Positions 8,245 through 40,478 of a stretch of DNA of 64,000 bases are shown in pieces. Positions within the stretch are counted from its first letter, which is position 1. Each line of letters opens with the position of its first letter. The stretch comes from Haliotis rufescens (taxonomy: Eukaryota). Under the pieces are notes generated by a model. It was not told the origin of the DNA, did not search any database, and saw only the letters and a program-made list of their open reading frames with translations. The translations under genes and the position numbers were made by a program. The stretch covers positions 7,378,001 to 7,442,000 of the forward strand of contig NW_025963890.1 in the NCBI RefSeq assembly GCF_023055435.1, written 5' to 3'.

Positions 8245-9456
8245 ATGGCTGAACACCAAGAACAGCCAGAGACACCACCAGAACCAAAGACGATAGCAAC
8301 TGTGAAGTCTTTCGAGCAGCTGTACAGCCTGATCTCTAGTGGTGATGCCAAAACTGTCATTGAGTACCTAGATCACAACCATATCACACCAGAAACATAC
8401 ACATCACTTGTGCAAGATCGTTATTACTCACAGCTAAGATATTCTCCGGTGGCCACGGCAGCCAGAACTGGACAACTTGACATCATGAAGGCCCTTATTG
8501 CTCATGGGTTCAACCCAGAGGAAACAAGTAGAAACCTTACTGGGAAGAATGAGTACCCAATTCATCTTGCATGTGCTGCAAACCAGATAGCTGTAGTGAA
8601 ATCTTTGATTGAAGATTATGGTGTTTGTGTTGATACCAGGGACTCGGGTGACTCAACTCCCATGTTCTGGGCAATATTGACGGAAAATATGGATATGTTG
8701 AAACTATTGGTAGATGCAGGTGCTGATGTAAACAGCACATTTCATGACACCATGACACCCCTACTCTTTGCAGCGTTCATGATAAATTCATTAATGTGTG
8801 AATACCTCATGGAAAATGGTGCAAATGTTAATGACACTGGTGACTGTGGTAACACTCCTCTTTGTCTGTCTGTCAGGTGTGTGAGCACCTCTCGCGTTCT
8901 GATTGATGCTGGGGCAGATATCGATCATATCAACAGTCAAGGTGACACCCCACTTATTCTAGCCAGCAAGAGGAACTACAGGAACACTGTAGAACTGTTA
9001 GGCTCTCGAGGAGCATGTGCTGACATTCAGGACAAGGAAGGACGCACAGCTTTGCATCATGCTGTGGACAGAGATCATAACAAGATTGCAGAGTATCTCA
9101 TTGGACACCTTAATGTTCAGTTGGATGTGCTGGACAATTTAGGAAGGACTGCTTTCTATATGGCATTTTTTCAAAGAAATGCTGAACTGGTTGAACTCTT
9201 AATCCAGGCAGGAGCTGACCCTGGCAAAGAAGATATAGTGTATGAGGACGATCCAGGAGACAAGGAGCATCCAGTCTGGTATGCAGTGGTGAAAGACTGT
9301 AGGCGTATTGGAAGAAATTCAAGGACACTTCAGCACCTGTGTAGATTCAAAGTTAGGAGCATGTTTGGTAGGGATATCAACACAGCTATCAAGACTCTGC
9401 CTCTGCCACAGACTGTTAAGGATGACCTTGCATTGCTTTATTACATAGGTCATTGA
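8245..9456 (+). CDS. Ankyrin repeat and SOCS box-containing protein (ASB family), 403 aa, single coding exon
   Basis: About 8 ankyrin repeats (SPVATAA, YPIHLAC, TPMFWAI, TPLLFAA, TPLCLSV, TPLILAS, TALHHAV, TAFYMAF); C-terminal SOCS box TLQHLCRFKV..LPLP; splice acceptor tttcag at 8217-8218 just before the ATG. Confidence 0.92.
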   Translation: MAEHQEQPETPPEPKTIATVKSFEQLYSLISSGDAKTVIEYLDHNHITPETYTSLVQDRYYSQLRYSPVATAARTGQLDIMKALIAHGFNPEETSRNLTGKNEYPIHLACAANQIAVVKSLIEDYGVCVDTRDSGDSTPMFWAILTENMDMLKLLVDAGADVNSTFHDTMTPLLFAAFMINSLMCEYLMENGANVNDTGDCGNTPLCLSVRCVSTSRVLIDAGADIDHINSQGDTPLILASKRNYRNTVELLGSRGACADIQDKEGRTALHHAVDRDHNKIAEYLIGHLNVQLDVLDNLGRTAFYMAFFQRNAELVELLIQAGADPGKEDIVYEDDPGDKEHPVWYAVVKDCRRIGRNSRTLQHLCRFKVRSMFGRDINTAIKTLPLPQTVKDDLALLYYIGH

Positions 9457-11336: not shown

Positions 11337-12817
11337 TACTGAACCACAAAAGAAACATCACCATGGATAAATATATTAGATACCTTATTTGTCCAAACAC
11401 TGTAAACATACTTTGAGACATATCAAAAAGATGAAACTTGGCAACACTGATCATCCAGGTTGAAATTAAAGTGTCAAATGTTCTCAAAGTGAAACACAAC
11501 ACTATTCTCTGAGAAAATGGAATCACAAGTCAGTACTAGTATCTCCTTTGTCCGCCATGTGCATTGATGACTGCTGTGCAACGTCAATACATGGAATGGA
11601 AGAGGCGGTTGATGAAGGCCATAGGCACTTGAGCCCACACTCTGAGGAAAGCCTGACGTATTTCAGCTGCAGTTGTCGGCCTTGGTCGGACGTCATTCAG
11701 TCGTCTTTGAATCTCGTCCCACAGGTGCTCAATGAGATTTAAATCGGGACTGAGGGCAGGCTATTGCACGGTTCTGATGCCATTCTGCTGTAGGAAGTCT
11801 CTTGTTGCTCTCGCAGTGTGGGCACAGGCGTTATCATGCTGAAACTTGCGGCGACGTGCCAAATGCATGAGGTGTGGCGTTTGGCCTCAAGACTTGATCA
11901 ATGGACCGAGGTGCTGTGACACCATTGCCTCTCCCTGGAAGACCACAGGGACGACCCTCTGTGCAAAACCAATTCCACTCCACACCATGATGCTCGGACC
12001 ATCCCCCGAATCTCAACAACACAAGCATCGGAATAACGTTCACCACGGCGTCTGCCATCTGCTGTTGAGATACAGTAACGGCTCTCGTCTGAGAAGAGGA
12101 CTCTTCTCCAATGCTGGTGGCGCCAAATGCTGGTGCTGTTACCAACCGAGGACGGTCCCGGCGATGACGTGGTGTCAGAATGGGTCCTCGGTGTGGCCTG
12201 TGACAGTGGAGGTGTCTGTTCGTCAATGTGTCGCTGGTGTGTCCCCATGGTCTGTCGAGCAGTTTCCGCAGCAGTAACAAAGCAATCTTGAAGATGCTGT
12301 CGCACAATCTGACGATCCTGACGTCGGGTGGTGACCCTAGGTCTTCCACGACGTGGTCGGGCATCTGTAGTGTTGGCGGTCTGGTACAGTTGCTTGATCC
12401 CGTGTATGGTCCTTACGGAGACTTGAAATGCTTTGGCTACTTGCCGGGTGGTTTGTCCAGCTTGCAATCGTCCAAGTGCTTGGTGTCGCTGATTTCTTGT
12501 CAATCTTGGAATGTGGTTGCAATTCAATAACAAATGAATGTTATCTGGGTTGATATTTATAGGGCAAGAAATGGGGGAACACATGTGCATTTCAATTTGC
12601 ACGGAACTCACGTGCATCTGGTTACCATTGCCGTTGCCGTGATGCGTTTGGGCGATCGGTTTTATTGTCATCTGCTTTGTTTTTTTATCATCAAAGTTCA
12701 TTATTCCGTACAAGGTAATGTTAAATTTAAGAAACTTTGACAAAAACTACCCAGATATTTAAATGACAACTTTTCATGCAATGTTACTTGGGGTGACGTT
12801 TCTTTTGCGGTTCAGTA
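11337..12817 (-). mobile_element. Tc1/mariner DNA transposon, full-length but defective
   Basis: TIRs tactgaaccacaaaagaaacatcacc / ggtgacgtttcttttgcggttcagta with TA flanks; frameshifted transposase with HTH (QALGRLQAGQTTRQVAKAF), GRPR, WRRVLFSDESR, QHDNA and SPDLNLIEHLWDE. Confidence 0.92.
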
Positions 12818-18387: not shown

Positions 18388-19558
18388 GTAGGTAGCAATA
18401 ACATGTACATATATCTGCATCAAAAGTACGGGTTGACACATGATATTTTGTCTCAATAATGAGTATAAACCCACACTGGACTTTGGCCATGACGGTGGTT
18501 GCCCACGATCAGTCACTATGCTACTGTGACTGAGTAGGTCAAACGTAAATGAATTTTTGTTTATCACCACAGTCAAACAGAAAATGCCCAGGTAGACTTG
18601 CCATGAAGGAGTGCAGTGGATCAAACTTTCGCAATGAGTGATTGAATGTGACACTGGTATCGTTTCCTGTAGCGCTTTGATAAGAATACATTTTACCGGA
18701 CACTTTCCGCTCAGTCTGATTCTGAGCATGATTCCATTATAAATTATTCTGTATTCACGCAATTATAATGATTACGACCTTCGCGAACTGAGCTGAATGT
18801 CTGCTAGGATACAGGGAGACGTGGAGGAACTATAATTTCGCCTGAAAAGTGCCCGTCAAAACCAGATTTAACCAGAAACAATGGCACCGAAACAGTTGAT
18901 TATCTCATACTCTTATCACATTAACTTATCCTGATAAGAAAGTTGTTTTAACAATGCAATTTTTTCAAGGTATGTTTCAGGAAATTAACAGTCCTAGCCC
19001 GACCCAATAAGTGTACTTCCTCGATTACATCCCCGGCATTTAATCGCAAAGATAATAGTGGGGAGAATTCCATGCATAACAACTACCTGTTGTTTAATTC
19101 AGACCCAGCATTTATTCAAGCCATCTGTTTAATCGAGGAGATACAGTGAATGAATATGCTTGAATACCTCACCAAAGCATCTTTACAATGTCATGCTTAT
19201 CTGTGTCATGTTTTCTTGTATTTAGCTTAAAGAATATTGCTTTGAGGTCATACTGTCATCTCTTAGAGGTATCACGATGTATATAGATGAAACAGACAAT
19301 AACTATTCTGCGGTTGGCAATGACATTCAAGATCCTCCTTACAATTTTGTTTAGCCAGTTGCACTGACTGGAATTACACTAGCAACAGTTTTATGAATTG
19401 CTGCACAGACTTATGTGATACCATGCAGGTCCATCAGATAGTGACGGTGTGAAGCAAAAGGCAGAGATTTACCACAAAAACATGTAAATATTTAAGATTG
19501 GCTTAACTTTTGTGTATATAAAGGTATCTTTTTGATTATTGAACTTTACTGTTTTTAG

Positions 19559-20250
19559 GAGCCCACCTGCACCCTGCTGTGTTCAGGGCACAACCAGTGC
19601 CCCACCCCCAGTTCCAGCCCGCCCCGCCCAGAGTACAATCGGAGCCCGCCCCTATGCAGGAGGGTATGGTATGGGGAGCTCAATGGGTTACAGCCCTTAC
19701 TCCTCCTATGGTGGTGGGTTATACAACAGCCCATATAGCTCCTATGGCAGCTATGGGTACGGAGGTTATGGAGGAGGTTACAATCGATTCGGTGGTAACC
19801 AGGATTCAATGAGCGGATTTGCCCGCCATGCAGAGGAGAACTCTCGGCCAGCTTTCCAGGCTATTGAGAGTGTTGTGAGTGCAGTCAGCTCTGTAGGAAT
19901 GATGATGGACTCGACTTTCCAGGCAGTGTATAACTCTTTCCGGGCTGTGATCGGTGTGGCTGACAACATGTCCAGACTGAAGAGTCAGCTGGTTTCTGTG
20001 ATATCTGCTTTAGCTTTCATTCGGACCCTTAAATACATCTACAGGCGTTTCTTGGAACTGCTCCGTCTGCGACCACCAGGTCATGCAGCCCAGGCCTGGA
20101 ATGATGCTGTGTTCCAGGCTGCAGCCAACATGGCCCCTGGGGAACCCTCTCCCAAGAACAGTGCCTGGCCAATTATCATGTTCTTCAGCATCATCATGGG
20201 AGGTCCCTGGCTTATCTGGAAGGTCATCAGGTCCTTCTCAGATGGCAGTG
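19559..20250 (+). CDS. PEX13: PEX13 exon 2
   Basis: Y/G-rich region, then AEENSRPAFQAIESVV..MMDSTFQAVYNSFRAVIGVA and the TM segment WPIIMFFSIIMGGPWLIWK. Confidence 0.97.
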
Positions 20251-21154
20251 GTATGTATTTCATTAAATCATTATGCCTTTTGTAATATTCATCTTTCTTA
20301 TCAGGGGGCACGGATGGCCCAGTCGTCTAAGACGCCATGATTTGCTGTGCAGAGTTGCGTCATTGGCTAGCCAGAAACCTATGATTGTGGGTTCGAATCC
20401 TGGTTCGCCTCAATTATGTTTCTAGGTTTGTCAGCACCATACCCATGCTCCTGGATTTCACCGAAGTGGTAAACGTCTGAGACCAGCATCACTTCGGGCT
20501 ATCCTCCCACATTAAGCTGACACGCCGTGATATAACTGGAATACTGTTAAAAGCGGTGTTAAACCCAACTCTCTCACACTCTTTCTTATCAATGCATTAC
20601 TGTTAATGTTGTCATGGCAGTGTTGTGAAGTACACAGTTTCAAGGCAATTATTGGGTTAAAAAGTAATTGGTGATCAATGATGGAGATGATAAAGGGAAG
20701 AGTGAGTGAAAATTGTTTACATCGCAGTCAGCAATATTCCAGCTGCATCACTGTGGCCTGTAAGGGTACTGGTAATAATCAACCTGTTCATGCTGACTAG
20801 GGAAAAAAAAATAACTGAAGGCATGGGCAACAATTTACAATCAAGCCAAATGAAAAAATGAGTAGAGGGCGTAACATGTTTGCGAGACAACTGAGAGACG
20901 GTCACTTGTATGTGTGATTAGGAGCATGATTATGTGATTTCTCACTATACATGTTAAAAGCAATGATCAAAATCATAAAATTGTAAAACTTAGACATTCT
21001 GTTTCATTGATTATTTTTATTTCTACTTGTGTTAAATTAGAATGAGTGTCCTATATCTTGTTAATAGTTGTTATCGTGTATGTAAGTGCTGTAGATAATT
21101 GCCAACTAGGAAATATTATACACCTGTACATCATTAATACCTTGCTGCATGCAG

Positions 21155-21283
21155 TCGAGAGCAACAGCTGGGCAAATGGGGACGAGGATCACTTTGTTGC
21201 CCGAGCTGAGCATGACTTCCGTGCGAGCAACAACACTGAAATATCCTTCACTGCTGGACAGATGATCAACATTGCTCCTAAAG
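21155..21283 (+). CDS. PEX13: PEX13 exon 3 (SH3 N-terminal half)
   Basis: WANGDEDHFVARAEHDF..EISFTAGQMINIAPK; phase 1 to 1. Confidence 0.95.
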
Positions 21284-21424
21284 GTTGGTGTGCATTCTTT
21301 TGTTTCACTTGCTTTTTGTGCCTGTAGTTTCAAATTTGTACAAGTCCTTATGGCCTGCTGTAAATATATGTGTCGATTAATTTGTCCCAATGAGGTGCAT
21401 TTTTTTAAATGAGGGCCTGAAGAG

Positions 21425-21917
21425 TAGTGGTGTCACGATAAATCGAAATATCGATATATTGCTATTGGTAAGCACTCAAAGTCAATAAATCGATTGTTAA
21501 GTCAGTTTCCGATCAATAGTATCGATTTCAGTTAGGAATATCGATAGTTTCGATTGTATTTACGATATCAATAAAATACATGCAATGCTATTAAATATTG
21601 TTTTTCTTTTGATCATGAGTGGTAGTAATTTACACATGGTAATGTGGAAGTTTCTTTTTCTTAAATTATTAGGGTAAAGAAAAAACAAATCAGTCGTATC
21701 TCAGACTTTACTTTTTATTTGTTATTATGGTTATCACATTCAAAGGAAACTTCAGATCCAAGGTTTAATTCAACTCTAAAATCCATCTGAAATGATACAC
21801 TGAAAACTATCGATATTTATTGCAATAGTTGCTTGCAATATCAATTGTTATCGCACTAGTTTCTGTCAATATCAATAGTTATCGCAATAGTGATTTCCAG
21901 ACCAATAGTCACCCCTA
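21425..21917. mobile_element. Non-autonomous hAT-type MITE, copy 2 (PEX13 intron 3)
   Basis: Closely similar to 3102-3580; perfect 8-bp TSD ctgaagag. Confidence 0.9.
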
Positions 21918-24216
21918 CTGAAGAGTTTAGCCAGGACCTGCAGCTTCTAAAGTCTGTGGGTCCTGATGGCAGCCTGGCAATTTCTTTTTATATTTCTAAG
22001 TTCTAACACTGCCAGGCATACAAACAAGATAGTTTAAGATCATTCTTTGTCTATTATTTTATGTTCCCCAGAGCATGCAGTGTACATTCTCGTGATTGCG
22101 GAGATCTCATTTAAAACAAAATAAGACATACACTTATTACTTAGTGAATAAAGCCCAATTCGTTTAGTGTTGTCCACAGATATTTGCAGACAGCACTGAG
22201 AGTTTGGTTTGGGGACAAATCACAGGTAGGGTGGTGGGAATGGCTACAGGAATTGAATGTGTGGAAAATTAGTTGAAAGCAAGCTGGAAGATAAAACTTT
22301 TAGAACTGTTACAGTCTCAAGGATTATCCTGAAAGTTTTGCCCCTGGTCCAAAGCAATGATATTTAGATATGATAATTATATTTTGCTAATTATCAGATA
22401 TTTCCTCTTTTGCTAATTATCATTATCATGCAGGAGACAACAATCTGCCATTATCAAATTTCAATGTGTGTTTAGATTGTAATTGTCTATATTTAAGTGA
22501 TAAGACATGAAATAATGACTGTTGTAAATGGTGTAACAGTTTGCTGATATTTTATGACACACACTGCTTTTTTCAGTTCGCTCTCTATTTCATCGGTAGT
22601 GTGTGCCGTATCGAAGGCAATATTGTTGAATTTCCAGTTTTTTAGTGGTGACCGTTCATAATATTTTCGTTATACAATGAATATTATACCAGGTTCAGGC
22701 TTTTGTTATGCCCCTGGCGAATATGGCGAATAACATCAAAAATATGATTGTCTGTGAACTGAAATTTGTATATCATTATGGAGAAAGAGTTGTAGGTAAA
22801 TCCATTTATATTTTGTCTTGTCATTCCAAAATCTAAATTTGTGTCTGTTTTTAAAACTTTACCCATGATTGTTTTCTTTCCTTGATTTATGGAAAGATTT
22901 AAGTGACCAAAAATATGTTTAAATACACTTTGGTGTTGTAGAGCACTGTTTTAAACGAAATAAGACTTTGGTCCGCTACCAAAGTGTTTGTTGTAAAAAC
23001 AAACACTTGTTTTGTCAATCCCTGCAGTGTGTGCGTGTTTGTCATGCTTGACTGGCCTGTTCATCAGATTTGCATAATAAGGGCTTGATTTAAGGAACTT
23101 GATTTAACTTGCACCCATCTTCCAGAGGCAAGGGAGTTACAAGACTACAATAGTCAAGTTTCCAGCCTTGCTGAACTAGACTGGAATTTTGGAATTATTT
23201 GGCTGGACTAACAGGTCTATAGCATGGTCCAATCAGAATCTTGTAACAAAGTCGACATCCTGTTCATAAACAACGGTCAATTGCGGGATTTGCTAAGCAT
23301 GGGTACCTTCAACTGGGCGTCAACAGATGTTTTCCAACTCTTTTTTTGTTTTTAATCAAAGTGCTCGAGTGTTGTGCTACAATACACAAACTCTGGGTGT
23401 CTGTGAGGCAGGGAATGTGAAACTTTTCCTCGATCAACTTGATGGTTGTCTTGACTGGGCGCCGCCATTTTGTTTCAAGCAAATACAAGTGATAACAGAG
23501 TTGGGCTTGCATGTCTAGTCATTGAAGATTGGTCGTGACTTCGCCACTATTTTAAATAGTATAACATTGTGAGAGGGCCCATCCTCTGTATCTCCAGGGC
23601 CCGCTTGTCGGTAAACGTACACTAACATCTGGACCCATGCCCGTGCTTCCCGCAATCTTAAATTACCGGCCTTAAGTTTCCTTATGACAATTTGATTGGC
23701 TACTCTTTCCGTCTAACATAACAATCAGAATGTGGGTTACAAACTAGTCTCAATGTTGGGTTGGTGATAATAACAACATAGCGTCCAGTCCCAATGATTA
23801 CGATAAAGTTTGCGAGAAATTCAACGTTGAAAAACAGACAGACACTCAAAAGAAAGTCCTCAAAAATCTTTTTGATGGAAAGGATGTCTATATGTTCATC
23901 TAAACTAGCAGTGGCTTTGGTTTCTAGGCAAATATGAGTTACCTCCCTTACACATTTTCCTTTTCCTCATCTCGACGTTTCATTGGTCGGTAAAATGTTG
24001 ATGAAAATCAAGATCAGGTAATGTAAGATCCATGAAAACCATGATCCGTGAATGGTTCCAAGGGTTAGTGTAGGTTTACCAAAATGCGAGCCCTGTAATA
24101 AGAGGAATGATAAGGAACAGACTAGTTAATTACTCATTCAGTAAAAAATTCTGTGAGTATGCACCAATCGCCAGCTTTGCAAGTCTGAGATAATACCTTG
24201 TGTTTGTGTTTTGCAG

Positions 24217-24602
24217 AGATGCAGCCCAAGGTAAGAGGATGGCTACTTGGATGTGCAGATGGAAGCAATACGGGGCTGTTGCCAGCAAACTATTTGAAAG
24301 TATTGGGAAAAAGAAGAGGAAAGAAATACCAGACCCCCACCCCCCAGGGTGTCCCAGCCCCACCAGCCAGCATCACCCCATCAGAAAGTGCTTTCTCCCT
24401 TACTGGGCCCACACCTAGTTCCACAACCTTGAACTCTGTACCAGAAAGTAACCTTGACACTGTCTTCAATGAGGCAACTTCTGCAGAGCTGGATGCATCC
24501 GATATTTTAGACAAATGTGGTTCCGAGGGCAATGACTGTGAATGTCCTTCCGTGTCTCAGCCTGTGCCTACAAAGGACTGCTGTGCTGGCAAGTCAACGT
24601 GA
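24217..24602 (+). CDS. PEX13: PEX13 exon 4 (SH3 C-terminal half and tail)
   Basis: QPKVRGWLL..TGLLPANYLKVLGKRRG; total CDS 1290 nt = 429 aa; AATAAA near 24733. Confidence 0.95.
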
Positions 24603-30163: not shown

Positions 30164-30315
30164 TCACTTAAAGCAGGTTGAAGGTATCTGTATTCCCCTG
30201 TCCTTAAAGAGCTTGCACCATAGGCGGAGTAAGATCAGGCTTGCAACTACTCTGGGACTGGTTCCATTCCAAGGTTGTCGTTTGGAGGAAAGGACCCTTT
30301 TTCCTCTAGCAAATC
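30164..30315 (-). CDS. Secreted peptide precursor 1 (73 aa), exon 2
   Basis: Acceptor ttgacatatccag|GA; FARGKRVLSSKRQPWNGTSPRVVASLILLRLWCKLFKDRGIQIPSTCFK*; homologous to the 38925 and 44999 exons. Confidence 0.85.
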
Positions 30316-32301: not shown

Positions 32302-32371
32302 CCGAAACACAGCAGGAATGAACTGTCATTAACAGGAACACGAGGGTCAAAGCGTACTTGACTGAGGCCAT
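32302..32371 (-). CDS. Secreted peptide precursor 1, exon 1 (signal peptide)
   Basis: MASVKYALTLVFLLMTVHSCCVS+G|gtaagt; 70 nt, phase 1. Confidence 0.85.
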
Positions 32372-32813: not shown

Positions 32814-35774
32814 AGACACTCGTCCACAAGAATTTGCTAGCAGGGTAGAACCGATCAGACACTCAATCACAAGAGTTGGTTAGCAGGGTCCAGCCAATCA
32901 GACGCTCACCCACCAGAGTTGTTAGCAGGGTCCAGCCGATCAGACACTCGCCCACAAGAGTTGTTAGCAGGGTCCAGCCGATCAGACACTCGCCCACAAG
33001 AGTTGTTAGCAGGGTCCAGCCGATCAGACGCTCGCCCACTAGAGTTGTTAGCAGGGTCCAGCCGATCAGACACTCGCCCACAAGAGTTGTTAGCAGGGTC
33101 CAGCCGATCAGACACTCGCCCACAAGAGTTGTTAGCAGGGTCCAGCCGATCAGACACTCGCCCACAAGAGTTGTTAGCAGGGTCCAGCCGATCAGACACT
33201 CGCCCACAAGAGTTGTTAGCAGGGTCCAGCCGATCAGACACTCGCCCACAAGAGTTGTTAGCAGGGTCCAGCCGATCAGACGCTCGCCCACAAGAGTTGT
33301 TAGCAGGGTCCAGCCGATCAGACGCTCACCCACCAGAGTTGTTAGCAGGGTCCAGCCGATCAGACACTCGCCCACAAGAGTTGTTAGCAGGGTCCAGCCG
33401 ATCAGACACTCGCCCACAAGAGTTGTTAGCAGGGTCCAGCCGATCAGACGCTCGCCCACTAGAGTTGTTAGCAGGGTCCAGCCGATCAGACGCTCGCCCA
33501 CTAGAGTTGTTAGCAGGGTCCAGCCGATCAGACACTCGCCCACAAGAGTTGTTAGCAGGGTCCAGCCGATCAGACACTCGCCCACAAGAGTTGTTAGCAG
33601 GGTCCAGCCGATCAGACGCTCGCCCACTAGAGTTGTTAGCAGGGTCCAGCCGATCAGACACTCGCCCACAAGAGTTGTTAGCAGGGTCCAGCCGATCAGA
33701 CACTCGCCCACAAGAGTTGTTAGCAGGCTCCAGCCGATCAGACACTCGCCCACAAGAGTTGTTAGCAGGGTCCAGCCGATCAGACGCTCGCCCACAAGAG
33801 TTGTTAGCAGGGTCCAGCCGATCAGACGCTCACCCACCAGAGTTGTTAGCAGGGTCCAGCCGATCAGACGCTCGCCCACTAGAGTTGTTAGCAGGGTCCA
33901 GCCGATCAGACACTCGCCCACAAGAGTTGTTAGCAGGGTCCAGCCGATCAGACGCTCGCCCACTAGAGTTGGTTAGCAGGGTCCAGCCGATCAGACGCTC
34001 GCCCACTAGAGTTGTTAGCAGGGTCCAGCCGATCAGACGCTCGCCCACAAGAGTTGTTAGCAGGGTCCAGCCGATCAGACGCTCGCCCACAAGAGTTGTT
34101 AGCAGGGTCCAGCCAATCAGACGCTCGCCCACTAGAGTTGTTAGCAGGGTCCAGCCGATCAGACACTCGCCCACAAGAGTTGTTAGCAGGGTCCAGCCGA
34201 TCAGACACTCGCCCAGAAGAGTTGTTAGCAGGGTCCAGCCGATCAGACACTCGCCCACAAGAGTTGTTAGCAGGGTCCAGCCGATCAGACACTCGCCCAC
34301 AAGAGTTGTTAGCAGGGTCCAGCCGATCAGACGCTCGCCCACAAGAGTTGTTAGCAGGGTCCAGCCGATCAGACACTCGCCCACAAGAGTTGTTAGCAGG
34401 GTCCAGCCGATCAGACACTCGCCCACAAGAGTTGTTAGCAGGGTCCAGCCAATCAGACACTCGCCCACAAGAGTTGTTAGCAGGGTCCAGCCGATCAGAC
34501 ACTCGCCCACAAGAGTTGTTAGCAGGGTCCAGCCGATCAGACACTCGCCCACAAGAGTTGTTAGCAGGGTCCAGCCGATCAGACACTCGCCCACAACAGT
34601 TGGTTAGAAGGGTCCAGCCGATCAGACGCTCGCCCACAAGAGTTGTTAGCAGGGTCCAGCCGATCAGACGCTCGCCCACTAGAGTTGGTTAGCAGGGTCC
34701 AGCCGATCAGACGCTCGCCCACAAGAGTTGTTAGCAGGGTCCAGCCGATCAGACGCTCGCCAACTAGAGTTTTTAGCAGGGTCCAGCCAATCAGACGCTC
34801 GCCCACTAGAGTTGTTAGCAGGGTCCAGCCAATCAGACGCTCGCCCACAAGAGTTGGTTAGCAGGGTAGAACCGATCAGACACTCGTCACAACAGTTGGT
34901 TAGCAGGGTCCAGCCGATCAGACGCTCGCCCACAAGTGTTGGTTAGCAGGGTAGAACCGATCAGACACTCGTCACAACAGTTGGTTAGCAGGGTCCAGCC
35001 AATCAGACGCTCGCCCACAAGAGTTGGTTAGCAGGGTAGAACCGATCAGACACTCGTCACAACAGTTGGTTAGCAGGGTCCAGCCGATCAGACGCTCGCC
35101 CACAAGTGTTGGTTAGCAGGGTATAGCCAATCAGACACTCGCCCACCAGAGTTGGTTAGCAGGGTCCAGCCAATCAGACGCTCGCCCACTAGAGTTGGTT
35201 AGCAGGGTATAGCCAATCAGACGCTCGCCCACAAGAGTTGGTTAGCAGGGTAGAACCGATCAGACACTCGTCACAACAGTTGGTTAGCAGGGTATAGCCA
35301 ATCAGACGCTCGCCCACAAGAGTTGGTTAGCAGGGTAGAACCGATCAGACACTCGTCACAACAGTTGGTTAGCAGGGTATAGCCAATCAGACACTCGCCC
35401 ACCAGAGTTGGTTAGCAGGGTAGAGCCAATCAGACGCTCGCCCACTAGAGTTGGTTAGCAGGGTAGAGCCAATCAGACGCTCGCCCACTAGAGTTGGTTA
35501 GCAGGGTATAGCCAATCAGACGCTCGCCCACTAGAGTTGGTTAGCAGGGTCCAGCCGATCAGACGCTCGCCCACTAGAGTTGGTTAGCAGGGTCCAGCCG
35601 ATCAGACGCTCGCCCACTAGAGTTGGTTAGCAGGGTAGAGCCGATCAGACGCTCGCCAACTAGAGTTTTTAGCAGGGTAGAGCCAATCAGACGCTCGCCC
35701 ACAAGAGTTGGTTAGCAGGGTAGAACCGATCAGACGCTCGCCCACAAGAGTTGGTTAGCAGGGTGGAACCGATC
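32814..35774. repeat. 42/43-bp minisatellite, about 70 units
   Basis: Unit ttagcagggtccagccgatcagacactcgcccacaagagttg with point variants; 43-bp variants dominate the right third. Confidence 0.97.
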
Positions 35775-38700
35775 CTCAGGCGTTAGTGGGTGTCCGGGGT
35801 CACTGTGCTTGTAAGATGGGAATAGTTACACACTGTGTGCCTGCGTGTGCCCACTGATGAACGTCCGGTGACATCTGTAAATGCTGATATGTATATAGCC
35901 ATGAACACTCAATTTCAGTTGAATTTTCTTGCCAGTGAAGATCTGAAGGTTCTTGACAATTGTATTGTATCTGTGTGTATTTCCCCAAAACATGTACATG
36001 TCCTGCCATTGTTTATTGTTGGTCAAGGTTGAATCTACGCCTTTGATGATCGATCCTGACTTTCAAGACAAGATCGAAAAGATCTTTGATCTCACAAAAC
36101 TTGTCTCCTGCTAATTTCAATAATAGTTGAAGCTTTACATTGTTATGTGAAGCCCATTTCTGGTGTCTCCCGCCGTGATATTGCTGGAATATTGCTAAAA
36201 GCGGCGTAAAACCATACTCACTCACTCACTCACTCACTTTACATCGTTAGAAACGGCAGCATCTGCAGTGTTGTGCACGACAGGGTCAGTGCTTTCATGT
36301 GTATTTGTGAAATTTTGCGGTGAACAACGTGAGAGAGTGGGTATGGGTTTACGCAACAATATTTTAGCAATATTCCATCAATTTCACACGGCAGGGGAAT
36401 CGAACCCGGCTCATGACGGGCGACACTTTTTTTTTACCAGGTTACCCACCCGCCCAAACGGACATGATTAAGATATTTTGAAAGTTCATTTCCACGATTT
36501 GATCATAGCAATAGCGGCAAATTAGAGGCTTTCGATTAATTATATATTATACACCTTCACAATGCCTTGAGATAGACATGTACCAGTATTCGTGACGTTT
36601 CTTATGTGAGTGAGTGAGTTTGGCTTTACGCCGCTTTTAGCAATATTCCCGCAATATCACGGCGGGGGACACCAGAAATGGGCTTCTCACATTGAACTCA
36701 TGTCGGCAATCGAACCCGGGTCTTCGGCATGACGAGCGAACGTTTTAACCACTAGGCTACCCGACCGCCTCCTTTTTTCTTATGTGAGTGAGTGAGTATG
36801 GTTTTACGCCGCTTTTAGCAATATTCCCGCAATATCACGGCGGGGACACCAGAAATGGGCTTCTCACATTGTACTCATGTCGGCAATCGAACCCGGGTCT
36901 TCGGCGTGACGAGCGAACGTTTTAACCACTAGGCTACCCGACCGCCTCCTTTTTTCTTATGTAATAGATTAAATACAATAATGCAGTATCCCGATTGAGC
37001 AATTTCTTGAAACCTGTTCATGGATTAAACACTCGGTGTAAGTGTTAATCCAATTATTAAGTATCTGCCTCATCTGTGATCTAATTAATGTGTTTACTCA
37101 AGAGTGAGTGAGTTGTGAGTGACAGTATTCCAGTTATATGACGACGTATCAGCTTAATGTGGGAGGGAAGCCCGAAGTGATGTAGGTATCCTACGCATTC
37201 CACTTCGGTGAAACTAACTAGCACGGGTATGATGCTGACAAACCTAGAAACATTATCTGGGCAAACCGAGATTCGAACACACAATCATAGGTTTCTGGCG
37301 TACCAAAAGGACTCAACTCTGCACAGCGAATTGCGGCGCCTTAGACGAAAAGGTGTACGCGAAAAGGTTAGCGTATCCTGCTCCACCGATGGCACCCTTC
37401 ACAGACAAATGCAAACGCAAGTCAATTGTTCACCTGAAAAAACACGGGGACATATGGTACAAGTAAAAAAGGGAATTGCATCGGACATACCGGACAGTTT
37501 TATCTATAAGTCTTTTGTGGGCATATATGACAAAATATGATCACATTAAAAAAAGACATTACAACATGTTTTGAAGATATATCTTATTTATAATTGAATT
37601 TTGTGTTTTTACAACATCTTGGTACAACATCTTCACCTCCTAAATGGACCCATGAAGATCCAGGGTAGAATAGGTCTTCATCAACCCATGCTTGCCGAAA
37701 ATGGCGACTGTGCTTGTCGTAAGAGGCGACTAGCGGAATCGGGTGGTCAGGCTCGCTGACTTGGTTGATGTATGTCATGGTATCCCAATTGCGTATATCG
37801 ATGTTCCTGATGTCAATCACTGGATTGTCTGGTCCAGACTCGATTATTTACAGACCGCCATCATATAGCTGGAATATTGCTGAGTGAGGAATTAAACAAC
37901 AAACAAAAACAAAACAAAAACCTCCTAAATGTCACCCCTCAAATAAAGGTGAGCTTCCGTACCTGCGTTACTCAGGCTTCTTTCGTGCACTTGCAAGTTT
38001 TGAACATGAACAATACATTACTAGCGCTACAATTAGAGGACATCCATTTGATTTCTGAATCGTTTGTGTTTAAAGTGAAAGTGCATAGATTGTTTGATGG
38101 TGCTCAATGCATAAACAGTTTGTTGGGGGAAGGGGGAGGGGGATTGTTGTCAAACAAATTAAATAAATGCTCCTTCAGTGAAAATGACTGATTACTCAAA
38201 CTTTCAGCGAAACTTTGACTATGACTAAGTACCTGACACATATGTATTTTAATGTTGTTTGTATGTTTGTCTTCACCTACATCTACATTATAAGTAAGAC
38301 ATTTGGGCCAAGGACTGGTGTTCAAATATTAGAGAAACGCTTCGTTAGCTCTTAGATCAGTCTTTCTCGCACATTTTAGCCTTACCTATACATTTAGAAT
38401 TGCTACTAGTCCATAACGTGCAAGTGTTCAAATTCTCAAAAGATGCACTTTCATGACGATTTCTAAATGTTTTCTTCATTTCTTAAATTATTTAGATCAC
38501 TTTGGCCAAAAAGGCTCCCATAATACCCTGGCCTTAATGTTTTACACGTGAGGGTAGGATTACAAATACACATTGAACTGGATGACAGGAATACGATTGG
38601 TTGGTTGGTTTGTTTGTTGTTTAACGCCGCACTCAGCAATATTCCAGCTATATGACGGCGGTCTGTAAATAATCGAGTCTGGACCAGACAAGCCAGTGAT

Positions 38701-38924
38701 TAATATCGTGTGCATCGATCCATGCAATTGGGATCAATGACATGCATCAAGCCTGACCACCCCATCCCGTTAGTCGCCTTTTACGACAAGCATGGGTTGC
38801 TGAAGATCTATTCTACCCCGGAATCTTCACGGGTAGACAGGAATAAGAGAACAATACATGAAACATCCACTTTATATAACCATTACATGTATGTTTATGA
38901 TCTTCACATCTTATAGGGGAGGGT

Positions 38925-39352
38925 TCAGTCCGTGAAGCAGCCTGAAGATATCTGTATTCCCCTGTCCTTAAAGTACTGGCACCATAGTCGGAGAAGGATT
39001 AGGCTGCCTGCAAAACCGCTAGCTTGACCAGACCAAGGATTCAATGGTTCAGAAGAGTTCGCCATCATTCTTTTTGACCAAGGATTCAATCGTTCAGAAG
39101 AGTTCACCAGCATTCTTTTTGACCAAGGATTCAATCGTTCAGAAGTGTTCACCAGCATTCTTTTTGACCAAGGATTCAATCGTTCAGAAGTGTTCACCAG
39201 CATTCTTTTTGACCAAGGATTCAATCGTTCAGAAGAGTTCACCATCCATCTTTTGGACCAAGGATTCAATCGTTCAGAAGAGTTCACCATCATTCTTTTG
39301 GACCAAGGATTCAATCGTTCAGAAGAGTTCACCATCCATCTTTTTGAAAATC
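38925..39352 (-). CDS. Secreted peptide precursor 2 (165 aa), exon 2 with 7 x 45-bp coding repeat
   Basis: Acceptor ttgacttttccag|GA; FSKR-(xxVNxSERLNPWSKR)6-MMANSSEPLNPWSGQASGFAGSLILLRLWCQYFKDRGIQISSGCFTD*. Confidence 0.85.
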
Positions 39353-40478
39353 CTGGAAAAGTCAAGAAAACCATCGTCAATGAATCATGTGAATACTGAC
39401 CACACTGATACATTACATATACCCAGGTAGAGGTTTTTTGTTTGTTTTTGGTTTGTTCTTTAACGCCGCACTTAGCAATATTCCAGCTATATGACGGCGG
39501 TCTGTAAATAATCGAGTGTGGACCAGACAATCCAGGGATTGATATCATGAGCATCGATCCACGCAATTGGGATCGATGACATGCATCAACCAAGTCAGCG
39601 AGCCTGACCACCTGATGCCGTTAGTCGCATTTTACGACAAGCATGGGTTGCTGAAGACCTATTCTACCCCGGAATCTTCACGGGTCCCAGGTAGAGGATT
39701 CTGGGAATGAAGCAGTAGGTGCTTAATCTCAATAAAATCAGATCTTTTACTCTGATACGATAACTCCCTGCTTGAAGATATAGGACACGTCAGGCAAACC
39801 CTGAGTGAACCTGGACGCCCAGTCTAAATGAATGATACGTCGGTTCTTTAACCACTCAGTTTCCTAACATGAATCGCTTCATTGGTTTGCAACTTCGGCT
39901 AGGACGTAATAAATATACAGACCACAAATATCTTGGCGCTCAGGAACAACAATTATCTTAACTATCTGCATCGGATCTAGTCGGTTTGGTTCGTTTCCTT
40001 TGACCAATGAAAGCCTGTGTGGGCGTGTCATGAAGAGGCATTTAGCCTTGAGTTCTTAATCATTAAGTGTCTATTTTGTCAGGAAAATCCGACCGTCTGA
40101 TTGGTTAAAAATGTAGGTTGAGTTCTAAATACAGAAATCAGATATGCCGTTCTGACTGCTTCGCTCACTCGTTCGCAGAACTGGGAAGCCTCGAGGCTGA
40201 TTTTGAAAATTCACCTGCCTCGACCTCCGATAGATGTGTCGTCAGAGTTTCACGTACCATGGCATTGTATAGGAGTAGAATATCTCATTTATATCAGATT
40301 GAAAAGGCACTGTGCATGACATAACTACATCTGCAGCCGGTCCGCCAGACCAATAGCTCGATAGTAATATCCAGTGTCTTGGATAACTAGCCAACAATGT
40401 AACAGACCATTTGCAACAATGTAACAAACCATTTGCAACAATGTCAAGTTCAAGCAGGCAATCATCATAGATATGAAT

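What the first reader, a model, noticed from the sequence alone, without database searches (positions are those of the whole stretch)
39028..39346. Apparent birth of a multi-peptide prohormone by in-frame 45-bp repeat expansion
Seen in sequence: in gene 2 a 15-codon segment is present 7 times, and each unit boundary carries KR. Processing would release six 13-mers (WMVNSSERLNPWS x2, MMVNSSERLNPWS, MLVNTSERLNPWS x2, MLVNSSERLNPWS) plus a 47-aa Cys-loop peptide. The paralogs have a single equivalent segment (gene 1 KRVLSSKRQPW, gene 3 RRIMFSKQLFPS), so the ancestral one-copy state sits next door. Substitutions between units change residues near the N-end but leave KR, SE and LNPWS intact and introduce no stop. 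Every unit has an N-x-S sequon, and none has the Gly needed for amidation. Established knowledge: molluscan neuropeptide precursors such as FMRFamide, myomodulin and pedal peptide are dibasic-punctuated repeats. Inference: either a new NPWS-peptide polyprotein or a glycosylated spacer.
Basis: partly seen in the sequence, partly recalled or inferred. Interest (0 to 1): 0.85.

Follow-up and report, generated by a model that had tools for sequence, protein, structure and literature searches.

The report
Repeat-expanded abalone secreted peptide gene
A red-abalone gene for a small secreted peptide has multiplied, in frame, a 15-codon piece carrying a Lys-Arg cutting site (7 copies here, 3 in black abalone), so it could yield several extra small peptides, but nothing yet shows that it is expressed or cut.

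Summary
A 45-bp unit is repeated 7.0 times with no indels at 39031-39347. It is open in the minus-strand frame that continues into a conserved C-terminal Cys-loop block, and every unit starts with KR.

It lies in the last exon of the middle gene of three tandem two-exon genes in Haliotis rufescens. Each gene has a signal-peptide exon, a phase-1 intron, and an exon with a dibasic site before a 42-47 aa peptide with C-x13-C. A frameshifted relic of a fourth copy is also present.

The only relative among billions of public proteins is a black-abalone RefSeq "uncharacterized protein". It has the same exon join but three units, so the array predates the split or turns over, and copy number is labile.

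The repeated module is the ancestral KR site plus the first 13 residues of the C-terminal peptide. KR at every boundary is therefore inherited, not independent evidence of selection for cleavage.

Changes between units avoid KR and LNPWS, which is only suggestive (p about 0.003-0.03). The gene changes about 7 times faster than its neighbour PEX13.

There is no homology to any neuropeptide, and no expression or peptide data could be obtained. "Prohormone" is plausible but unproven. The scan had noted the three-gene family before, on this same window only.

The parts
39030..39344 (-). Seven in-frame 45-bp units (KR + 13 aa each). TRF coordinates are 39031-39347.
38925..39352 (-). Gene 2 last exon, coding part. 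The AG acceptor ends at 39353, the exon starts with 'GA' (codon positions 2-3), and the stop is at 38925-38927.
   Evidence: the join is confirmed by P0001
38928..39029 (-). Gene 2 C-terminal tail after the last unit. It contains the conserved block SLILLRLWC-x13-CF; with the last unit it forms the 47-aa peptide.
41991..42060 (-). Gene 2 exon 1 coding part: ATG, a 23-aa signal-peptide region, and the first base of a split codon. The GT donor is at 41990-41989.
42118..42125 (-). TATATAAG, 65 nt upstream of the gene 2 ATG. It is conserved in gene 3 and is a putative TATA box.
   Evidence: sequence inspection only
38871..38876 (-). TATAAA about 50 nt after the stop, conserved between genes 1 and 2. 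It is a possible variant poly(A) signal.
   Evidence: inference
32302..32371 (-). Gene 1 exon 1 coding part (signal peptide). The donor is at 32301-32300.
30164..30315 (-). Gene 1 last exon coding part: a single segment, an RGKR site and an SKR site, and a cationic Cys-loop peptide.
45743..45812 (-). Gene 3 exon 1 coding part (signal peptide). The donor is at 45742-45741.
44999..45150 (-). Gene 3 last exon coding part: a single segment, an RR site, and a Cys-loop peptide.
44836..44929 (-). Frameshifted relic of a fourth last exon. SLYFIRIWCKYL is in one frame and ..VISCFD-stop in the next.

Best explanation
Gene 2 is one of three tandem, abalone-restricted, two-exon genes for small secreted peptide precursors. 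Each consists of a signal peptide, a short pro-piece ending in a dibasic site, and a 42-47 aa C-terminal peptide with an about 19-residue helix and a C-x13-C loop.

Replication slippage or unequal crossing-over has multiplied a 45-bp module. That module holds the ancestral KR processing site plus the first 13 residues of the C-terminal peptide. There are 7 modules in red abalone and 3 in black abalone.

The conserved, and therefore probably principal, product is the C-terminal Cys-loop peptide. If KR-specific convertases (PC1/3- or PC2-like; the sites lack the furin P4 Arg) cut the precursor, six 13-mers ending in RLNPWS are co-released. Whether those have any activity is open.

Shown: the array, its frame, the gene structure, the family, the orthologue with 3 units, and the fast divergence. 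Inferred: secretion, cleavage, the disulfide, and which product matters.
For: - Array and frame.
- Three homologous signal-peptide exons, each ending in a phase-1 GT donor, matched by phase-1 AG acceptors.
- XP_071118289.1 of H. cracherodii (P0001) joins the same two exons and has 3 units.
- The C-terminal block is the best conserved part among paralogs (16 invariant positions). Its dN/dS is 0.25-0.5.
- AlphaFold2 gives a helix at residues 20-38 of the gene 1 exon product (pLDDT about 75) and a disordered N-terminal part.
- A dibasic site sits at the same place in all members: KR, KR, RR.
- With one unit kept, gene 2 aligns collinearly with genes 1 and 3.
- The array is unique in the genome.
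- Nonsynonymous differences between units all fall in codons 3-10. None falls in KR or LNPWS, while the only synonymous site is in LNPWS.
Against:
- None of the three H. rufescens genes has a protein in the public collection, although that species' RefSeq proteome is there.
- The gene changes fast: 7 of 59 non-repeat residues differ from black abalone, against 7 of 429 for PEX13 (p = 5e-4). That is also what a drifting, weakly constrained gene would show.
- The statistics on unit variation rest on 6-10 non-independent events.
- The structure model is of low to medium confidence (mean pLDDT 64).
Confidence: 0.5

Rival explanations
1. One reading: the 13-mers (x7-RLNPWS) are themselves new bioactive peptides. 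Gene 2 would then be a young multi-copy neuropeptide- or hormone-type polyprotein whose dose or diversity is raised by the expansion.
For: - There are seven KR-punctuated units behind a signal peptide.
- KR and RLNPWS are unchanged in 9 of 10 units across two species, while the N-terminal half varies.
- The nearest named clusters by language-model features are all neuropeptide precursors, but the scores are only 0.82-0.84, below the tool's 0.9 threshold.
Against: - KR and LNPWS identity can be explained by recent copying and homogenisation (94% unit identity).
- The segment is poorly conserved among paralogs.
- There is no Gly for amidation.
- There is no homology to any peptide family.
- It is absent from abalone ganglia precursor and peptide lists.
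- Interspecific change is fast and the family is lineage-restricted. From general knowledge, that is unusual for neuropeptides.
Confidence: 0.2
2. In red abalone, gene 2 is silent or effectively neutral (an orphan gene drifting or dying), and the array is simply an unstable coding minisatellite with no selected role.
For: - Genes 1-3 are not annotated as proteins in the public H. rufescens set.
- The cluster shows birth and death, with a frameshifted relic at 44836-44929.
- Amino-acid divergence is high.
- The region is repeat-prone: a 42-bp x 70 satellite lies next door and SINEs flank the exon.
- 'No stop' is uninformative.
Against: - Both exons are intact, with an ATG in a good context, canonical splice sites and a TATA-like box.
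- The orthologue is kept in frame with KR sites in a second species and is in RefSeq. From my knowledge of NCBI's pipeline, an orphan model needs transcript support to be retained.
- dN/dS is below 1 in the C-terminal block among paralogs.
Confidence: 0.2
3. The repeat is an uncleaved, N-glycosylated, disordered spacer, so the product is a single secreted glycoprotein carrying the C-terminal domain.
For: An N-x-S/T sequon is present in all seven units. The KR sites lack the furin P4 Arg, so cells without PC1/3 or PC2 might leave them uncut (sequence inspection). The N-terminal part is predicted disordered.
Against: One black-abalone unit has lost the sequon (NSF). Genes 1 and 3 have no conserved sequon at that place. 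The dibasic site before the C-terminal peptide is conserved in all members.
Confidence: 0.1

Closest known systems
Molluscan multi-copy neuropeptide precursors (FMRFamide, myomodulin, pedal peptide)
   Same: A signal peptide followed by tandem near-identical short peptides, each bounded by KR. The copies arose by in-frame tandem duplication.
   Different: No sequence homology. There is no amidation Gly. The family is restricted to Haliotis and changes fast between sister species. The best conserved part is a non-repeated C-terminal Cys-loop peptide. Neural expression is unknown.
Yeast prepro-alpha-factor (MFalpha1 with 4 copies, MFalpha2 with 2 copies of a 13-mer after KR spacers); comparison from general knowledge
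   Same: 13-residue non-amidated peptides starting with Trp, repeated after KR sites. Copy number differs between paralogs, and N-glycosylation sequons are present in the precursor.
   Different: It is unrelated in sequence and kingdom. Here the sequon lies inside each unit, there is no Glu-Ala spacer, and a distinct C-terminal peptide follows.
Honeybee apidaecin multipeptide precursors (host-defence polyprotein with variable unit number); comparison from general knowledge
   Same: A lineage-specific secreted peptide gene in which a module of processing site plus peptide is tandemly multiplied with variable copy number. The gene cluster evolves fast.
   Different: The 13-mers here are net neutral rather than cationic and Pro-rich. 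No immune induction data exist, and there is no homology.
Precursors with a C-terminal disulfide-loop peptide after a dibasic site (allatostatin-C/somatostatin type; frog 'Rana-box' antimicrobial peptides); comparison from general knowledge
   Same: The mature peptide sits at the very C-terminus after KR or RR, with one disulfide loop near the end and a ...CF ending. The genes have two exons, with the signal peptide in exon 1. The gene 1 peptide is strongly cationic, with an amphipathic helix.
   Different: The loop is C-x13-C, not C-x6-C or C-x4-5-C. The gene 2 peptide is net neutral (47-mer 0; +2 for the 49 aa scored). No sequence relationship was detected.

Membership tests
Multi-copy neuropeptide/prohormone polyprotein | N-terminal signal peptide | tested here: met
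   MASVRYTLTLLFLVMTVQA|Y has a hydrophobic core and small residues at -3/-1. It is homologous in three paralogs and the orthologue. This was judged by inspection; no signal-peptide predictor was available.
Multi-copy neuropeptide/prohormone polyprotein | Several similar peptides, each flanked by dibasic sites | tested here: met
   Seven KR + 13-aa units.
Multi-copy neuropeptide/prohormone polyprotein | Sequence homology to a described peptide family | tested here: not met
   No Pfam family above cut-off. The HMM search of 1.84 billion representatives found only the black-abalone orthologue. PDB search found nothing. Literature motif searches were empty.
Multi-copy neuropeptide/prohormone polyprotein | Expression in neurons or endocrine cells, and detection of the processed peptides | not testable with these tools
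The peptides are absent from the H. discus hannai ganglia precursor and peptidome supplements, which is weak negative evidence from another species.
Multi-copy neuropeptide/prohormone polyprotein | Mature peptide conserved between related species | tested here: inconclusive
   RLNPWS is kept in 9 of 10 units across two species, but positions 1-8 vary. The clustering p of 0.003-0.03 rests on non-independent events.
Allatostatin-C / somatostatin-type peptides | C-terminal peptide after a dibasic site, with a short C-x6-C (or C-x10-C) loop and family sequence motifs | tested here: not met
   The position after KR/RR is met, but the loop is C-x13-C and there is no profile match.
Cationic amphipathic host-defence peptide precursor | Net positive, amphipathic mature peptide | tested here: inconclusive
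   The gene 1 mature peptide is about +5 to +7, the gene 3 peptide about +2, and the gene 2 47-mer 0. Maximum helical moment is 0.43-0.53. A helix is predicted at pLDDT about 75.
Coding minisatellite (in-frame VNTR) | Unit length a multiple of 3, with copy number differing between genomes | tested here: met
   The unit is 45 bp, with 7 units in H. rufescens and 3 in H. cracherodii. Within-species polymorphism was not tested.

The most novel reading that the evidence does not exclude
Within the short time separating red and black abalone, an in-frame minisatellite has turned a single-peptide precursor into a true polyprotein. Its RLNPWS-ended 13-mers would be a new class of bioactive (signalling, pheromonal or defence) peptides. 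That would make it a caught-in-the-act example of how multi-copy peptide precursors are born and how copy number is tuned between sister species.
Probability: 0.2. Interest if true: 0.7.

Novelty: new variant of a known kind. Interest (0 to 1): 0.45.

Why it matters
Multi-copy peptide precursors are common, but their origin is usually ancient and has to be reconstructed. Here the one-copy paralogs, a 3-unit orthologue and a 7-unit gene exist side by side in very close species (PEX13 is 98% identical). The step from single-peptide precursor to polyprotein can therefore be studied directly.

The family is also an undescribed, abalone-only set of secreted Cys-loop peptides. It evolves fast, as immune, reproductive or pheromone proteins often do. 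If the gene is not expressed or not cleaved, it is just an unstable coding minisatellite in an orphan gene.

Tried and rejected
Only its protein was compared.
- The joined (spliced) protein models were not searched or looked up. Exons were searched one by one by reference.
- Weak own-genome look-alikes (L004, L005, L007-L012; E 0.2-9) were inspected. They show no exon features or lie in repeats and are treated as chance.
- The Pfam '2C_adapt' hit (21.5 bits, below the cut-off, no passing stretch) is a repeat artefact.
- P0002 (465 aa, ENA) is a low-complexity repeat ORF, not a relative.
- ESM Atlas: all scores are below 0.9. The C-terminal part alone gave nothing, and the Atlas model has pLDDT 0.58.
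- The PDB profile search gave only chance Sec61-beta hits at E about 1.
- Literature searches for LNPWS, RLNPW, LLRLWC, VNSSERL, LLRIWC and MASVRYT found nothing relevant.
- The greenlip abalone genome paper (main text) and the Pacific abalone ganglia paper with its supplements do not contain the motifs.
- A neutral divergence figure for the two species was sought in a paper and not found.
- A gene 1 word search found no protein of 27-86 aa.

Full report
**1. The observation**

Tandem Repeats Finder reports one array at 39031-39347: period 45, 7.0 copies, 94% matches, no indels, score 543. The repeat finder shows the same 45-nt spacing.

On the minus strand, only one of the three frames is open. 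It reads seven units of KR + 13 residues: WMVNSSERLNPWS twice, MMVNSSERLNPWS, MLVNTSERLNPWS twice, MLVNSSERLNPWS, and a last MMANSSEPLNPWS. The last unit continues without a basic site into a 34-residue tail with two Cys.

Two cautions apply. Three of the six frames (one minus, two plus) are open across the array. With only seven variable nucleotide sites, the lack of a stop is expected by chance (P = 0.58). The neighbouring 42-bp x 70 satellite at 32814-35764 is open in all six frames, which shows how little an open frame in a repeat means by itself.

The 45-bp array occurs only once in the 1.33-Gb genome.

**2. What it sits in**

The window is from red abalone, Haliotis rufescens. A PEX13 exon at 19539-20282 is 100% identical to XP_046374823.2. 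Earlier scan notes had named that species.

The array lies in the last exon of the middle gene of three tandem minus-strand genes. Each gene has the following parts:
- an exon 1 with an ATG in a good context and a 23-aa signal-peptide region: MASVKYALTLVFLLMTVHS.., MASVRYTLTLLFLVMTVQA.. and MASVMNAVALVFLLMAAQA..;
- an ending one base into a codon, at a GTAAG donor;
- a last exon that starts after a conserved ..YYCAG acceptor with the remaining two bases of that codon.

Homology between the three units covers about 150 nt upstream of the ATG, the start and the end of the intron, and about 100 nt after the stop. A TATATAAG box is shared by genes 2 and 3.

A frameshifted relic of a fourth last exon lies at 44836-44929.

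The exon 1 region and the C-terminal profile match nothing else in the genome at significance. The weak look-alikes proved to be chance.

**3. The orthologue**

A word-based search with the gene 2 last exon found one protein, XP_071118289.1. It is an 'uncharacterized protein' of black abalone, H. cracherodii, of 104 aa.

This protein joins the same two exons at the same split codon and has the same tail, but it carries three units: MLVNSSQRLNPWS, MLMNSFQRLNPWS and MMVNTSERLNPWS.

An exhaustive profile search of 1.84 billion cluster representatives found nothing else credible.

The family is therefore known only from Haliotis. None of the three red-abalone genes has a protein in the public collection, even though that species' RefSeq proteome is included.

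From my knowledge of NCBI's pipeline, an orphan model such as the black-abalone one is kept only with transcript support. That is indirect evidence that the orthologue is transcribed and spliced as modelled. I could not check this.

**4. What was duplicated**

With the array collapsed to one unit, gene 2 aligns collinearly with genes 1 and 3 (protein alignment A2).

All three genes have a dibasic site at the same place: RGKR in gene 1, KR in gene 2, RR in gene 3. It is followed by a poorly conserved stretch of about 10-13 residues and then the conserved block SL[IF]LLR[LI]WC-x13-CF.

The repeated module is therefore the ancestral cleavage site plus the N-terminal 13 residues of the ancestral C-terminal peptide. 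KR at every boundary is a consequence of what was copied, not independent evidence for selection on processing.

Units 3 and 4 are identical, and units 0 and 2 differ at one synonymous site. Units resemble each other more within a species than between species. This pattern fits recent slippage or unequal crossing-over, with lineage-specific turnover.

**5. Signs of constraint**

Among the seven red-abalone units, six variable sites are nonsynonymous. All six lie in codons 3-10. The only synonymous site lies in the LNPWS part.

Given mutational opportunity, the chance that all nonsynonymous events avoid KR + LNPWS is about 0.03. It falls to about 0.003-0.01 if the black-abalone differences are added. 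The events are few and not independent, so this is only suggestive.

Among paralogs, the C-terminal block has 16 invariant positions and dN/dS of 0.25-0.5.

Between the two species, the non-repeat parts of gene 2 differ at 7 of 59 residues, plus one terminal indel. The neighbouring PEX13 differs at 7 of 429 (Fisher p = 5e-4). This roughly sevenfold faster change fits either relaxed constraint or the diversifying selection typical of immune, reproductive or pheromone peptides. It is unlike most neuropeptides.

**6. Structure and properties**

AlphaFold2 on the gene 1 exon product, with a three-row alignment, gives a helix over residues 20-38 at pLDDT about 75. Elsewhere confidence is low (mean 64). 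The Atlas model of the orthologue has pLDDT 0.58.

The helix is moderately amphipathic, with a moment of 0.43-0.53. From the residues listed, the mature peptide of gene 1 is strongly cationic, that of gene 3 is about +2, and the gene 2 47-mer is net neutral (the 49-aa stretch scored there is +2). The 13-mers are also net neutral.

The internal KR sites lack an Arg at P4. Cleavage would therefore need PC1/3- or PC2-type enzymes rather than furin. Only gene 1 has a furin-type RGKR site.

**7. Comparison with known systems**

No Pfam family passes its cut-off. There is no PDB relative, and no paper contains the motifs. The ganglia precursor and peptidome supplements of Pacific abalone do not contain them either.

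Language-model features place the orthologue nearest to assorted neuropeptide precursors. The scores of 0.82-0.84 are below the level the tool calls more than a lead.

The architecture works like several known kinds of precursor:
- a dibasic-punctuated polyprotein such as the FMRFamide or myomodulin precursors, yeast alpha-factor, or honeybee apidaecin;
- precursors with a C-terminal disulfide-loop peptide.

It is a member of none of these families.

**8. Verdict**

Most likely (about 0.5) this is a real, fast-evolving, abalone-only secreted-peptide gene. In that reading an in-frame minisatellite has multiplied the cleavage site plus the peptide N-terminus, the conserved C-terminal Cys-loop peptide is the main product, and the 13-mers are co-products of unknown value.

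The rival readings are:
- the 13-mers are a new bioactive peptide class (about 0.2);
- the red-abalone gene is silent or neutral (about 0.2);
- the repeat is an uncleaved glycosylated spacer (about 0.1).

The joined spliced protein was not searched; exons were searched separately by reference.

Noticed in passing
window 32814-35764: A 42-bp satellite of about 70 copies (93% matches) lies just upstream of gene 1's exon 1, between genes 1 and 2. It is open in all six frames, which generates long spurious ORFs.
   Followed up: partly
window 38609-38834 and 39448-39685: Two copies of the same tRNA-derived SINE, 92% identical, in direct orientation and sense to gene 2. They bracket the last exon about 90 nt from each end. 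The upstream copy is absent at the equivalent place in gene 1, so it was inserted after the gene duplication.
   Followed up: partly
window 44836-44929: A frameshifted relic of a fourth family member's last exon lies directly downstream of gene 3. This shows birth-and-death turnover in the cluster.
   Followed up: yes
window 8245-9456 (+): A single-exon ORF of 403 aa has ankyrin repeats and a C-terminal SOCS box (an ASB-type protein).
   Followed up: partly
window 19539-24600 (+): PEX13 gene (Peroxin-13 N-terminal exon and an SH3 exon). It is 100% identical to H. rufescens XP_046374823.2 and 98% to the H. cracherodii orthologue, and was used here as a divergence yardstick.
   Followed up: yes
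window 11898-12743 (-): An ORF with helix-turn-helix domains of transposase type, probably a DNA-transposon remnant.
   Followed up: no
window 30164-30315 (-), gene 1: Gene 1 has a furin-type RGKR site and a second SKR site followed by Gln, which could cyclise to pyroglutamate. Its predicted mature peptide is strongly cationic (about +5 to +7), which makes it the most antimicrobial-peptide-like member of the family.
   Followed up: partly
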